Assembly: GCF_001194135.2 (NCBI RefSeq)
Contig: NC_068990.1
Location: 7,452,627-7,516,626 of the forward strand
DNA: 64,000 bases
Direction of reading: 5' to 3'
Source of the DNA: Octopus bimaculoides
Lineage: Eukaryota
The notes under the pieces are model-generated. The model worked only from the letters and a program-made list of their open reading frames with translations, was not told the origin of the DNA and did no database searches. Positions within the stretch are counted from its first letter, which is position 1; the number at the start of each line of letters is the position of its first letter. The position numbers and the translations under genes were made by a program. Of the stretch, positions 18,471 through 22,111 are shown in pieces.

Positions 18471-18679
18471 CAGAGATAACATTGGTCGTGTTCGCCACAT
18501 GGTGATGGATGACAGGTGATTGACTATAAATCAAATAGCCAATGCTATTACCATATTCCATGAGAGAGTTGAGAATATTCTGCACAGTGAACTTATGACG
18601 AAGGTTTCTGCGTGGTGGCTACCACGTCTTCTGACACCGAATCAAAAGCGCACCAGGCTGATCACAGTATGAGAAATGC

Positions 18680-18914
18680 AGTTTTATATTTATGAGATGA
18701 GGAATTATGTACATTATTTACAATGTTTACATTTGACGGATATTTGTCCTCATCTTAACACAACTTTTCGGTTGATATACCCTCCCGCCTTCATCAGGTG
18801 TATTGGGGAATTTTCGAATCTGTGTTCTCATTCCTAAGGTATTTTTCGATGTTGTTATTATTATTATTAATATTCAGGTCACTGCCTGTAATCGAACTCG
18901 GAATCTTGGGGTTA
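18680..18914 (-). mobile_element. tRNA-headed repeat (family H) with hammerhead-like motif; left arm of palindrome
   Basis: Reverse complement reads taaccccaagattccGAGTTCGATTacaggcagtgacc-(AAT)n-...ccaatacacCTGATGAaggcgggagggtatatcaaccGAAAagttgtgtt. Confidence 0.8.
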
Positions 18915-18940
18915 GAGTTCGATTCCAGGCAGTGACCTGA

Positions 18941-19015
<75 letters not shown>

Positions 19016-19144
19016 TCGAAAAATACCTTAGGAATGAGAACCCAGGTTCGAAAATTCCCCAAGATACCTGATGAAGGCTGGATGGTATCTCAGCCGAAAC
19101 ATTGATGAGGACAAATATCCGTCAAATGTAAATAATGTAAATAA
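18915..19144 (+). mobile_element. tRNA-headed repeat (family H) with hammerhead-like motif; right arm of palindrome
   Basis: B-box GAGTTCGATTCC at 18915, then (AAT)n, then aagatacCTGATGAaGGCTGgatggtatctCAGCCGAAAc at 19061-19100. Confidence 0.8.
19061..19104 (+). ncRNA. Minimal type-I hammerhead ribozyme motif (Penelope-type), probably decayed
   Basis: CUGAUGA 19068-19074, one extra A, stem II GGCUG/CAGCC (19076-80/19091-95), GAAA 19096-99. Stem III palindrome mutated (ACAUU instead of ACGUU) and the 3' strand of stem I deleted in this copy. Confidence 0.6.
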
Positions 19145-22111
19145 AGTATGGGAAAATCTGACATTTTTTTGAGCCAGATCCAACTCGTTTCCTTCTTCAG
19201 GTTAAGTGTTGGGTTCACTAAGAGACAAAGACAATGAGATAATCCATGCAGTGGGAACATCTCTCCTGACTCGCTCCAAGGTCGTTTCCTCAGCAGGGAA
19301 AGTGATCGCCTCAGTTTTTTGTGCTTGCAAAAGGCATTGTGCTTATTTACTATCTTCAGAAGGACCACACCATCAATGGAGAGTACTATGCCAACTTGCT
19401 GAGGTAGTTACGAAAGGCTATCAAGACCAAACGCCCTTAAAATAACTGACAAAAAGGGATTTGTTTCATCAGGACAATACACCAGCACACAATGGCTGCT
19501 ATGTGTAACTGAGGCTTTTGACTGGTTGGCCAGTTCTGCCGACCCCGGTGCTCGTCGACACCAGACCTCGACTGGGATTTATTTAACCGACCCCGAAATA
19601 ATGAAATTTGGATGTCGTCAAGTTTGACGCTAATCAGAGAATAGGTGAACAAATATATAGACTATATAAAATGTAATTCAGTTAGTTCTGTAATCGAAGT
19701 TTGAAATCCACACTTCGTTGTTGCCTGACTGTCTACCAGGCTGTCTCTTTGTTTGGTGTAGAAGTCAGTTACCTTTACGCTGGTTCCCCACCCGTCTTAA
19801 ATCTAATACGAATCCTAGCCATCCTGATACTAGAGTGTTCCATTTCCTCTCTACGCCATACATTATGATCTAATAGTGTCGAGTAGGCAACGAGTAGAAT
19901 TACTTCTCCCATTAATTTTCCTCATCTTCTACTACTGAACTAGTATTATGTGTATGTGTTTGGTTGGTAAGAAAATAACACTGCTTCAAAGTTCAATGAC
20001 TAACATTGTTGTAGTACTATAAATGTAGGAAAGATTAGAAGAAGGAAAAGTAGGATGTATAAAGTGCAGAGTAAAGCAAGGCTGCTGGAAGAAAATCCAA
20101 CAGACTAAAAATATACACTCACTTGCATCTGTGCATGATCGCACATTCGTTCCTTCATATACAATATATACAATATAACGCGCGCACACAGATACACACG
20201 CACAGCACACACGTTTCTGTTTCACGCACATACAGATTGCACTTAGATGCAGTTAAAGACACAAATGAGTAAAGCATTCGGGTATTAAATGAAATATAAA
20301 TAAGGGAATTATAAGAGAAAGAGAAACAAAGGAGCGATATAAATAGAAGAGGAAGGAGAGAGAGAGGGGGGGAGAGGGAGATTGAGAAATGCATTTTGGG
20401 GCGAGAAAGTTTCGAACAGAGAGATATTGGAGAGAGCAGTTTCATGTGCAGAACTGCGACATGAGTGAAAATATTGTTTTTAAAATGTGAAGAGAGAATA
20501 AGAAAATGCCACNNNNNNNNNNNNNNNNNNNNNNNNNNNNNNNNNNNNNNNNNNNNNNNNNNNNNNNNNNNNNNNNNNNNNNNNNNNNNNNNNNNNNNNN
20601 NNNNNNNNNNNNNNNNNNNNNNNNNNNNNNNNNNNNNNNNNNNNNNNNNNNNNNNNNNNNNNNNNNNNNNNNNNNNNNNNNNNNNNNNNNNNNNNNNNNN
20701 NNNNNNNNNNNNNNNNNNNNNNNNNNNNNNNNNNNNNNNNNNNNNNNNNNNNNNNNNNNNNNNNNNNNNNNNNNNNNNNNNNNNNNNNNNNNNNNNNNNN
20801 NNNNNNNNNNNNNNNNNNNNNNNNNNNNNNNNNNNNNNNNNNNNNNNNCCCCTTCCTTCTCCTCATCCCCTCCTCTTCCCCCTTGTCCTCCTTGTCCTCC
20901 TCCTTGTCCTTGTCCTTCTCATTCTTGTCCTCTTTCTTCTCCTTGTCCTTGTCCTCCTCCTTCTGGTCGCCATCCTTCTCCTCCTCCTTCTAATTCTCTT
21001 CCTCCTCCTCCGTGTCGTCATCATTATCATTGTAGTCGATCAAGTAAGCCATATTCGGCCTCTATTATTTATAAACTTGTACAAAACTCAGAATCCTTTA
21101 TTAATGCTCGCCGTTATTTTTACGGTAGTAACGTAAAAGCAGGGTGAAACACATCTACGTCAGTGACCAGTGCAAGTATAATGAAGTTGTAGTACGAATG
21201 ATGAAGGTAATAACGATGATGATGATGATGATGATGAAGACAAGGACTATGAAAATGACTTACTGTACATCAACGATGTCGTCGTCAGGCTTAAAATGAA
21301 TCTATGGAAATTCCAATTGAGTTTTACGACCGAACAGAATTGATTAGACATGCGATAGAGAAACAATAGCAATTCCATAGTGTTAGACATTAGTTATTTT
21401 TTCAACTAGCTGACGATCAACTCCGCCATTTTCTTATGTTCTGTTATAGCATTTCATTTGATGTTCTTTATAAATGCTTCATTTAAAATTAGCAAATCGA
21501 GATCATTATTGCCTACATTTAACATCCTTGAGATTATTATTGTGAATTTACTGAATTATTAGTTCTATTATAGCCATGATTAGCTGTAGCTAGCTTAATA
21601 TCCTGTTTCGAAAATGTTTTGAATTGCTTCGAAGCAGTATCTATTGAGTACAATAGAAATTGCACAACCAGGAGATGTATATGGCCTAAAAGTGGGCTTT
21701 TAAGATTGCTTAAACTTCTGATCAAATCACAATCAGCACAGATAATATCTTGCATGGGCAAAGGCAGTTTTAGATAGGCTACTGACAATTAGCAACATAT
21801 GCTTCTTGCTCAAATAAATAAAAGCTGAATTTAAAACCGAAACAAATATTCGTGAGGGGTAGCAATTTGATAGCCAAGTAAATGTTACTCATCACGATAT
21901 GATTCATGATAGCAACTTTGAAAACGACCCATTAATATAATTAAATTATGTAAAAACTGGGTTTCATATTTGAGGTGTTTCGAATGTATTCGACCTAACT
22001 CCTAAAAATGACAATAAAATATGACAGTCATATGTAGATAGATTGTGTACATTGAACTACTAACGTAATAATCACATTACTTTGAAGCAACTAAATGAAT
22101 ATAACAGAAAC

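What the first reader, a model, noticed from the sequence alone, without database searches (positions are those of the whole stretch)
18666..19155. ~465-bp head-to-head palindrome inserted as one unit, with target-site duplication, inside a mariner
Seen: 18680-18899 and 18915-19144 are reverse complements (apart from (AAT)n length and small indels) around a 15-nt loop, ggaatcttggggtta. The mariner reading frame stops at TRLITV and resumes at ENLTFF. Both sides carry a near-identical 11-mer, agtatgagaaa (18666-76) and agtatgggaaa (19145-55). Inference: an inverted dimer was generated and integrated in a single retrotransposition event (fold-back or template switch, as in the inverted pseudo-LTRs of Penelope-like elements). 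It yields a ~200-bp hairpin from either strand, including the TH pre-mRNA.
Basis: partly seen in the sequence, partly recalled or inferred. Interest (0 to 1): 0.7.

Follow-up and report, generated by a model that had tools for sequence, protein, structure and literature searches.

The report
Inverted retroposon dimer, one insertion event
A 468-bp near-palindrome made of two inverted copies of a short SINE-like octopus repeat was inserted in a single event, with an 11-bp target duplication, into a dead mariner transposon inside an intron of the tyrosine hydroxylase gene; it is a rare by-product of retrotransposition, not a new kind of element.

Summary
The arms are 18677-18899 and 18915-19144, around the 15-nt spacer GGAATCTTGGGGTTA. 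Outside indels they are 92% reverse-complementary (165/179). The predicted RNA hairpin is -263 kcal/mol on the + strand and -239 on the - strand.

The target-site duplication (TSD) is real. Removing the insert plus one 11-mer restores the mariner frame (TRLITVWENLTFF). Thirteen mariner relatives, and the DNA of another Octopus sinensis copy, carry that 11-mer once.

The repeated unit is a short interspersed, SINE-like repeat. One monomeric relative lies at 55729-55990; it shares only the outer terminus and continues into an abundant octopus repeat.

The left arm reaches that shared terminus. The right arm stops 37 nt short, at a GTA microhomology with the target. Both arms break off within 15 nt of each other at the centre.

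Best reading: one target-primed reverse-transcription event in which the cDNA folded back and copied itself. Twin or dual priming is the close alternative. I found no Penelope features.

The TH context is confirmed: exons at 35616-35383 and 6558-6371 on the - strand flank the site.

I could not reach the rest of the octopus genome, so recurrence, the partner LINE and read support remain untested. Interest is modest.

The parts
18475..18665 (+). Left part of the decayed mariner transposase pseudogene that hosts the insertion (...LLTPNQKRTRLIT).
   Evidence: Translation; Pfam Transposase_1; alignment to 13 mariner proteins and to another O. sinensis copy in L001.
18666..18676 (.). Left copy of the 11-bp target-site duplication, AGTATGAGAAA. 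It carries one G>A change that turns the mariner Trp codon into TGA.
   Evidence: The empty site has a single copy.
18677..18899 (-). Left arm: an antisense copy of the unit. Its outer end (18677, TGCAGTT...) is the terminus shared with the monomer at 55729. It contains a short (ATT)n run at about 18856-18873.
18900..18914 (.). 15-nt spacer GGAATCTTGGGGTTA between the arms. On the + strand it can form a 4-bp mini-hairpin (AATC/GGTT).
   Evidence: The junction is unique in the window and in the fetched loci.
18915..19144 (+). Right arm: a sense copy of the unit starting with GAGTTCGATTCC. It holds an expanded (AAT)n at 18940-19013. It ends 37 nt short of the unit's terminus, at a GTA shared with the target.
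19145..19155 (.). Right copy of the 11-bp target-site duplication, AGTATGGGAAA (the ancestral state).
19156..19560 (+). Right part of the mariner pseudogene (ENLTFFEPDP...HQDNTPAH), with frameshifts and stops.
55729..55990 (-). The only other family member in the window. It is a monomer with the same outer terminus, (CTT)n where the arms have (ATT)n, and a 60-nt internal deletion. Upstream (in sense orientation) it runs into the core of an abundant octopus interspersed repeat (55991-56252).
35383..35616 (-). Tyrosine-hydroxylase exon (HGGNWRRKSLIEDARFETV...VSLLVILKEQMTSLADIMKVFE). The acceptor is tttgtag| and the donor GAG|gtaagt. It lies upstream of the palindrome in the transcript.
   Evidence: The best library match, P0074, is 89% identical and carries Pfam Biopterin_H at E = 1.6e-16.
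6371..6558 (-). Next TH exon (STKLQVMHIETRVSKQ...DESAKEKVR). The acceptor is gaatag| and the donor AGAG|gtaag. It is in frame with the exon above, so the palindrome sits in the roughly 28.8-kb intron between them.
   Evidence: P0074 continues with STKLQVMHIETRVSKQAGS....

Best explanation
A single LINE-type, target-primed reverse-transcription event produced a 5'-to-5' inverted duplication of a 5'-truncated SINE-like RNA.

Proposed steps:
1. The + strand was nicked at GGGAAA^ATCT. Its 3'-OH primed on the true 3' end of the RNA and made the antisense cDNA that is now the left arm.
2. Synthesis stopped about 220 nt in. The cDNA 3' end folded back on a tiny hairpin within GGAATCTTGGGGTTA and was extended along itself, making the right arm.
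3. That extension stopped 37 nt before the end. It was joined through a GTA microhomology to the 11-nt overhang of the other target end, which was filled in to give the TSD.

What is shown: one insertion with one TSD; one complete and one truncated outer end; coincident inner ends; microhomology at the truncated end.

What is inferred: an RNA intermediate, and fold-back copying rather than a second priming event on the same or a second RNA (twin or dual priming with a full overlap).

The stated confidence (0.5) is for the fold-back version. Single-event retrotransposition of either version (this one plus the twin/dual-priming rival) is about 0.7.

Since insertion the arms have diverged by about 8%, and the (AAT)n run has expanded in one arm. 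Any transcript through the site, including the TH pre-mRNA, carries a hairpin of about 190 bp.
For: One event:
- Excising 18677-19155 restores the mariner frame and length. All 13 homologues, including O. sinensis P0033 (TRLITSWENLTWFE), align without a gap.
- A second genomic mariner copy reads ...GATTACATCATGGGAAAATCTGACA, with the 11-mer once.

Unit polarity and retroposon character:
- The monomer at 55729 and the left arm share the same outer terminus, while their other ends differ. That is the pattern of fixed 3' ends and variable 5' truncation.
- The monomer is contiguous with an interspersed repeat present at least 6 times in the window and twice in O. sinensis locus L001.
- The insert has no terminal inverted repeats, because the left arm has 37 extra terminal nt.
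- The right arm ends where the full-length unit reads TGTAC and the target reads AGTAT, a shared GTA.

Fold-back:
- The two arms break off within 15 nt of each other.
- The spacer self-pairs on the strand that would be the first cDNA: -14.1 versus -11.9 kcal/mol.

Not classical twin priming:
- Experimental L1 inversions show only 1-10 bp of overlap or deletion at the junction (PMC11702581). Here about 190 nt are represented twice.
- cDNA self-annealing into hairpins is proposed in the same paper.
- Dual priming is postulated in PMC2837659.
Against: - No partner LINE or RT was identified.
- Only three units of the family could be examined.
- tRNA ancestry is not demonstrable: ARAGORN finds nothing, Rfam finds nothing, and the single B-box-like match is no more than chance.
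- The arms differ by 8%, so identity at birth cannot be shown.
- The 3-nt microhomology and the 4-bp mini-hairpin are weak features.
- The nick site GGGAAA^ATCT does not match the L1 consensus.
- A replication-based fold-back after an ordinary insertion would leave the same sequence.
Confidence: 0.5

Rival explanations
1. Twin or dual priming. The + strand 3'-OH primed at the RNA 3' end. The - strand 3'-OH (...CCCATACT) primed 34-37 nt upstream on the same or a second RNA copy. Both cDNAs ran to the same RNA 5' end and were joined by end-joining with about 15 nt of filler. I treat this as a sub-variant of the single-event retrotransposition reading.
For: The topology is exactly that of twin priming: the sense arm has the true 3' end, and the inverted arm starts internally at a microhomology. 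Dual priming with two RNAs has been postulated (PMC2837659). A discrete TSD of 11 bp is close to the 12-18 bp seen at twin-primed insertions (PMC11702581).
Against: Both cDNAs must stop within 15 nt of each other, which needs a common RNA 5' end. Known twin-primed junctions overlap by only 1-10 bp. 5'-inverted SINE insertions are very rare (1 in 5554 Alu; PMC2912911). The two cDNA ends are identical rather than complementary, so they cannot anneal.
Confidence: 0.22
2. An ordinary 5'-truncated insertion (left arm plus spacer), followed later by a DNA-level fold-back duplication. A replication template switch or hairpin-mediated repair copied it back and returned to the original template at the GTA next to the right TSD.
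For: It predicts the same final sequence, including the spacer mini-hairpin and the GTA microhomology. Arm divergence (7.8%) and TSD divergence (1 in 11) do not separate the two dates.
Against: It needs a second rare event that begins exactly at the element's 5' end and ends exactly at the TSD boundary, without disturbing either TSD copy or the mariner flank.
Confidence: 0.12
3. The palindrome is itself a mobile unit: a foldback or MITE-like DNA transposon (for example Mutator-like, with a 9-11 bp TSD), or a hairpin master copy that was retrotransposed whole.
For: Long inverted arms with internal microsatellites and an 11-bp TSD resemble some long-TIR non-autonomous elements (from general knowledge). 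Another pair of 94-nt inverted repeats lies at 23712-24207.
Against: The extreme termini are not inverted repeats: TGCAGTTTTAT... versus ...AATGTAAATAA, with the left arm 37 nt longer. The only other family member is a monomer. The junction occurs once in the window and not at all in the fetched loci.
Confidence: 0.08
4. Two independent insertions in opposite orientation, or an assembly fold-back chimera.
For: Inverted pairs of other SINE-like repeats lie elsewhere in the window (38718-39592). The assembly has at least one artefact, at 63136-63213.
Against: Only one TSD pair flanks both arms and no second duplication lies next to the spacer. The right arm lacks its 3' end, which an independent TPRT insertion would keep. 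A chimeric read would invert the mariner flank as well and would not restore the frame on excision. The arms also differ by 14 substitutions, a 7-nt indel and about 57 nt of microsatellite.
Confidence: 0.04

Closest known systems
Twin priming: 5'-inverted L1 insertions (Ostertag & Kazazian 2001, cited in PMC11702581)
   Same: A single TSD pair. One segment has the true 3' end. The inverted segment starts at an internal site with microhomology to the target overhang, and the two 5' sides are joined in the middle.
   Different: In twin priming the two segments are adjacent parts of the RNA, with 1-10 bp of overlap or loss. Here the same 190 nt or so are present twice, there is a 15-nt spacer, and the template is a short SINE-like RNA, for which inversions are very rare.
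Dual priming (hypothetical; Meyer et al. 2010, PMC2837659)
   Same: Two cDNAs in opposite orientation inside one TSD, both starting near the 3' end of the template. It predicts exactly an inverted dimer.
   Different: It was proposed for poly(A)-primed L1 and was never validated. Here the second start is internal (-37) rather than in a tail, and the equal inner ends are not predicted.
Self-primed ('snap-back') second-strand synthesis by reverse transcriptases, and cDNA self-annealing hairpins in L1-induced fold-back junctions (PMC11702581)
   Same: The 3' end of a cDNA folds back on a few base pairs and is extended along itself, giving a hairpin with a small loop and arms of equal inner end.
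   Different: This is known in vitro and as chromosome-scale fold-back rearrangements. It has not been described as a tidy, TSD-flanked palindromic SINE insertion.
Inverted pseudo-LTRs of Penelope-like elements
   Same: An inverted partial copy generated during integration of a retroelement.
   Different: There is no RT or GIY-YIG ORF and no hammerhead ribozyme. The unit is a short non-coding repeat.
Foldback elements and long-TIR MITEs
   Same: An almost wholly palindromic insert with internal simple repeats and a TSD.
   Different: The termini are asymmetric and the family's other copy is a monomer.

Membership tests
Twin-primed (5'-inverted) non-LTR insertion | One target-site duplication flanks the whole insert | tested here: met
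   An 11-bp TSD. The empty site has a single copy in 13 homologues and in L001 DNA.
Twin-primed (5'-inverted) non-LTR insertion | The sense segment ends at the element's true 3' terminus | tested here: met
   The outer end of the left arm coincides with the terminus of the monomer at 55729.
Twin-primed (5'-inverted) non-LTR insertion | The inverted segment starts internally, at a microhomology with the target | tested here: met
   The right arm stops 37 nt short. GTA is shared between the unit (TGTAC) and the target (AGTAT). This is only 3 nt.
Twin-primed (5'-inverted) non-LTR insertion | The two segments are neighbouring, essentially non-overlapping parts of one RNA | tested here: not met
   About 190 nt are duplicated in both arms, against 1-10 bp in experimental L1 inversions.
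SINE (tRNA-derived, LINE-mobilised) | Internal Pol III A and B boxes or a tRNA-like head | tested here: inconclusive
   GTTCGATTCC is at the start of the right arm but is a single hit at chance level. ARAGORN and Rfam find nothing. The arms would be truncated 5' of any A box.
SINE (tRNA-derived, LINE-mobilised) | Dispersed copies with a fixed 3' end, variable 5' truncation and a variable-length TSD | tested here: inconclusive
   The pattern holds for the three units available, but three is too few. No TSD could be confirmed for the monomer.
SINE (tRNA-derived, LINE-mobilised) | 3' tail shared with a partner LINE | not testable with these tools
   No octopus genome was reachable. The LINE fragments in the window (17825-18121, 30083-30640) show no similarity to the unit.
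Penelope-like element | RT plus GIY-YIG ORF; hammerhead ribozyme in the pLTR | tested here: not met
   The insert holds only short ORFs with no homologues. Rfam gives no hammerhead at E <= 10.
MITE / foldback DNA transposon | Terminal inverted repeats at the extreme ends, abutting the TSD | tested here: not met
   The left end is TGCAGTTTTAT... and the right end ...AATGTAAATAA. The outer 37 nt of the left arm are unpaired.
MITE / foldback DNA transposon | Multiple copies with the same palindromic architecture | tested here: inconclusive
   There are none in 64 kb plus 20.7 kb of octopus DNA, and the only relative is a monomer. The genome itself was not searched.

The most novel reading that the evidence does not exclude
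The locus is a natural fossil showing that target-primed reverse transcription can deliver a complete palindromic copy of its template in one integration, by cDNA snap-back or by the never-validated dual priming. If octopus SINE/LINE machinery does this recurrently, it would be a dedicated source of long perfect dsRNA hairpins inside neural genes such as TH. Those hairpins would be ready-made ADAR and small-RNA substrates in an animal known for massive RNA editing.
Probability: 0.12. Interest if true: 0.6.

Novelty: new variant of a known kind. Interest (0 to 1): 0.35.

Why it matters
The locus is a clean, TSD-bounded example of an inverted duplication made during a single retroposon integration. 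Its overlap of about 190 nt is far larger than classical twin priming produces. It therefore bears on whether snap-back or dual priming occurs in vivo. It also places a dsRNA-forming structure of about 190 bp in an intron of tyrosine hydroxylase in a cephalopod. As a single old locus of an uncharacterised repeat family it is a curiosity unless a genome-wide survey shows that it recurs.

Tried and rejected
- A six-frame peptide query of the arms and junction against the 5.8-billion protein collection, meant to fish out other copies through spurious ORFs, found nothing.
- Two exact-pattern scans of metagenome contigs, one for the core 26-mer and one for the head 26-mer, found nothing.
- A look-up of O. 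sinensis protein P0033 gave 20.7 kb of octopus DNA (L001) with no copy of the unit.
- ENA contigs that carry related mariner and LINE proteins are not octopus: L002 shares only the mariner.
- A full-text search of the literature for six sequence strings from the unit gave no hits.
- An nhmmer profile built from the three units found no further copy in the window or in L001.
- tRNA or known-RNA ancestry was not found. ARAGORN reports none, and Rfam gives only generic hairpin hits far below threshold.
- Homology of the arm head to the core of the abundant 'type A' repeat is weak: p = 0.01 with one copy and not significant with the others. I do not rely on it.
- The monomer is not nested inside a type-A repeat, because its 3' flank is unrelated.
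- A tblastn probe with the TH catalytic domain and a Pfam scan of all long ORFs found no exon. The TH exons were found only through the N-terminal RRxSLIEDAR motif. PDB phmmer with that exon found nothing.
- An A-to-I editing signature between the arms was considered and rejected by inspecting the alignment: 6 transitions against 8 transversions.
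Full report
**1. What is there**

Window 18666-19155 contains a near-palindrome. The left arm is 18677-18899, the spacer 18900-18914 (GGAATCTTGGGGTTA) and the right arm 18915-19144.

I aligned the reverse complement of the left arm to the right arm. The result is 165 matches and 14 mismatches, or 92% (JC distance 0.083). There are three length differences:
- the trinucleotide run, about 5 units on the left and about 25 on the right (TRF 18940-19013);
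- one 7-nt indel;
- 37 nt at the outer end of the left arm with no counterpart on the right.

The 14 substitutions are 6 transitions and 8 transversions, so the arms show no editing-like bias.

As RNA, the + strand folds to -262.9 kcal/mol (z = -30) and the - strand to -238.7 kcal/mol (z = -27.7).

**2. Host and target-site duplication**

The flanks are a decayed mariner transposase. The conceptual translation hits Pfam Transposase_1 at E = 1.3e-14.

The insert is bracketed by AGTATGAGAAA and AGTATGGGAAA. The chance of a 10/11 match at abutting positions is about 2e-5.

Joining the flanks with one 11-mer gives ...LLTPNQKRTRLITVWENLTFF... in frame. Thirteen mariner homologues align across this point without a gap, including Octopus sinensis LOC118767600 (TRLITSWENLTWFE). 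The DNA of that other copy (L001, O. sinensis chromosome CM016860.1) reads ACCAGGCTGATTACATCATGGGAAAATCTGACA, with the 11-mer once.

The left TSD copy has since mutated TGG to TGA.

**3. The organism**

The window is octopus DNA. The nearest named mariner relative is from O. sinensis. In addition, an interspersed repeat present at least six times in the window occurs twice in the O. sinensis locus.

**4. What the unit is**

The window holds only one other relative, at 55729-55990 on the - strand. It is a monomer with these features:
- It shares the outer terminus of the left arm: ...ATAAATATA(A/G)AACTG(C)A in sense orientation.
- It shares the 9-mer repeats TGTAAATAA and the body TTAGGAATGAGAAC.CAGGTTCGAAA.TTCCCCAAGA.
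- It has (AAG)n where the arms have (AAT)n.
- Its similarity to the arms stops at GACCTGAAT. Upstream of that it runs straight into the core (...CATCGCTTGACAACCGATG...CCCCGTAACTT) of the abundant 'type A' repeat.
- The flank beyond its 3' end is not type A, so it is not a nested insertion.

Other chimeric head/tail combinations of the abundant repeats occur in the window.

I therefore read the unit as an alternative 3' module of a modular SINE-like family. Its fixed end is the 3' end, and its variable end is a 5' truncation. This is an inference from three units only.

Ancestry from a tRNA could not be shown, and no partner LINE was found.

The termini of the insert are not inverted repeats, which argues against a cut-and-paste element.

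**5. Mechanism**

With this polarity the dimer is 5'-to-5'. The left arm is an antisense copy that starts at the true 3' terminus, directly next to the TSD. That is what priming from a + strand nick at GGGAAA^ATCT would give.

The right arm is a sense copy that ends 37 nt early. There the full-length unit would read TGTAC and the target reads AGTAT, so GTA is shared. This is the usual microhomology attachment of a cDNA end to the other target overhang.

Both arms break off within 15 nt of each other. The spacer can form a 4-bp mini-hairpin on the strand that would be the first cDNA.

The simplest single story is that the first cDNA folded back and was copied along itself before attachment.

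The close alternative is twin or dual priming, in which the - strand overhang primes at the internal GUA. It has the same topology, but it needs both cDNAs to end at the same point.

Classical twin priming does not fit as such. Experimentally its junctions overlap by only 1-10 bp (PMC11702581), whereas here about 190 nt are present twice. Dual priming was postulated but never validated (PMC2837659). Inverted SINE insertions are very rare in primates: 1 of 5554 Alu (PMC2912911).

**6. Rivals**

- A later DNA-level fold-back of an ordinary insertion would give the same sequence, and I cannot exclude it without orthologous loci.
- Two independent insertions are unlikely. There is one TSD pair, no second duplication at the spacer, and the right arm lacks its 3' end.
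- An assembly chimera is unlikely. The structure is a discrete insert whose excision restores the host frame, and the arms differ by substitutions, an indel and about 57 nt of microsatellite. Read support could not be checked.
- A palindromic mobile master is disfavoured by the asymmetric termini and the monomeric relative. The junction is unique in the DNA available.
- Penelope-like features are absent.

**7. Gene context**

A probe with the TH catalytic domain found nothing. The N-terminal motif, however, hit RRKSLIEDARFE on the - strand.

The exon at 35616-35383 has a canonical acceptor and donor. Its best match in the 1.8-billion representative library, P0074, is 89% identical and carries Biopterin_H at E = 1.6e-16. 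P0074 continues with STKLQVMHIETRVSKQ..., which is the exon at 6558-6371 in the window, in frame.

The palindrome therefore lies in the roughly 28.8-kb TH intron between these two exons. The pre-mRNA (- strand) carries the hairpin. Whether it is edited or processed was not tested.

**8. Verdict**

The single-event reading is well supported. The retrotransposition and fold-back steps are the best inference. The Penelope analogy should be dropped.

The structure is a rare variant of known inversion by-products of target-primed reverse transcription, seen at one old locus. Its wider importance depends on a genome-wide survey that these tools could not perform.

Noticed in passing
window 62806-63545, N run at 63136-63213: A run of N is flanked on both sides by near-identical (ATT)n blocks with the same interruptions. 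This looks like an assembly gap with a duplicated flank rather than biology.
   Followed up: no
window 23712-23805 and 24114-24207: A 94-nt inverted repeat (83%) brackets a fragment of the abundant 'type A' repeat (23851-24009). It may be a TIR-bearing element with a nested insertion.
   Followed up: partly
window 38718-39007 versus 39442-39592; also 38729/38946 and 54523/54740: Copies of a second abundant SINE-like repeat (GAGTTCAAATTCCGCCGAGGTCGAC...) occur as an inverted pair about 450-640 nt apart and as partial tandem dimers with 217-nt spacing. One copy (38740, - strand) joins this head to the tail of the 'type A' repeat, which suggests module shuffling between families.
   Followed up: partly
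window 49335-50050 (+): A second, unrelated decayed mariner-type transposase fragment (...DNAPAHTVFSMRQFLNKQGITLLSHSQYSPEF...). It falls below the Pfam threshold.
   Followed up: no
window 30083-30640 (-) and 17825-18121 (+): Fragments of non-LTR retrotransposon ORF2 C-termini (CRMCGERGETVWHIISECPKLAQREYKKRHDN; IPTIIGALGFVCKCLKENLDKLG). The second lies only about 550 bp upstream of the mariner and shows no similarity to the palindrome unit.
   Followed up: partly
window 35383-35616 (-), compared with protein P0074: The library protein that best matches the TH exon lacks the 27 residues VETARVSLLVILKEQMTSLADIMKVFE (the first strand and helix of the ACT domain) that the window exon encodes before its GT donor. 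This points to an alternative donor or a faulty gene model in the related species.
   Followed up: no
unit 3' region, e.g. window 18692-18754 (left arm): GATGAGGA and TCCTCATC form an 8-bp stem around the TGTAAATAA repeats near the unit's 3' end. This may be a recognition stem-loop for the partner reverse transcriptase. The right arm lacks the distal half.
   Followed up: no
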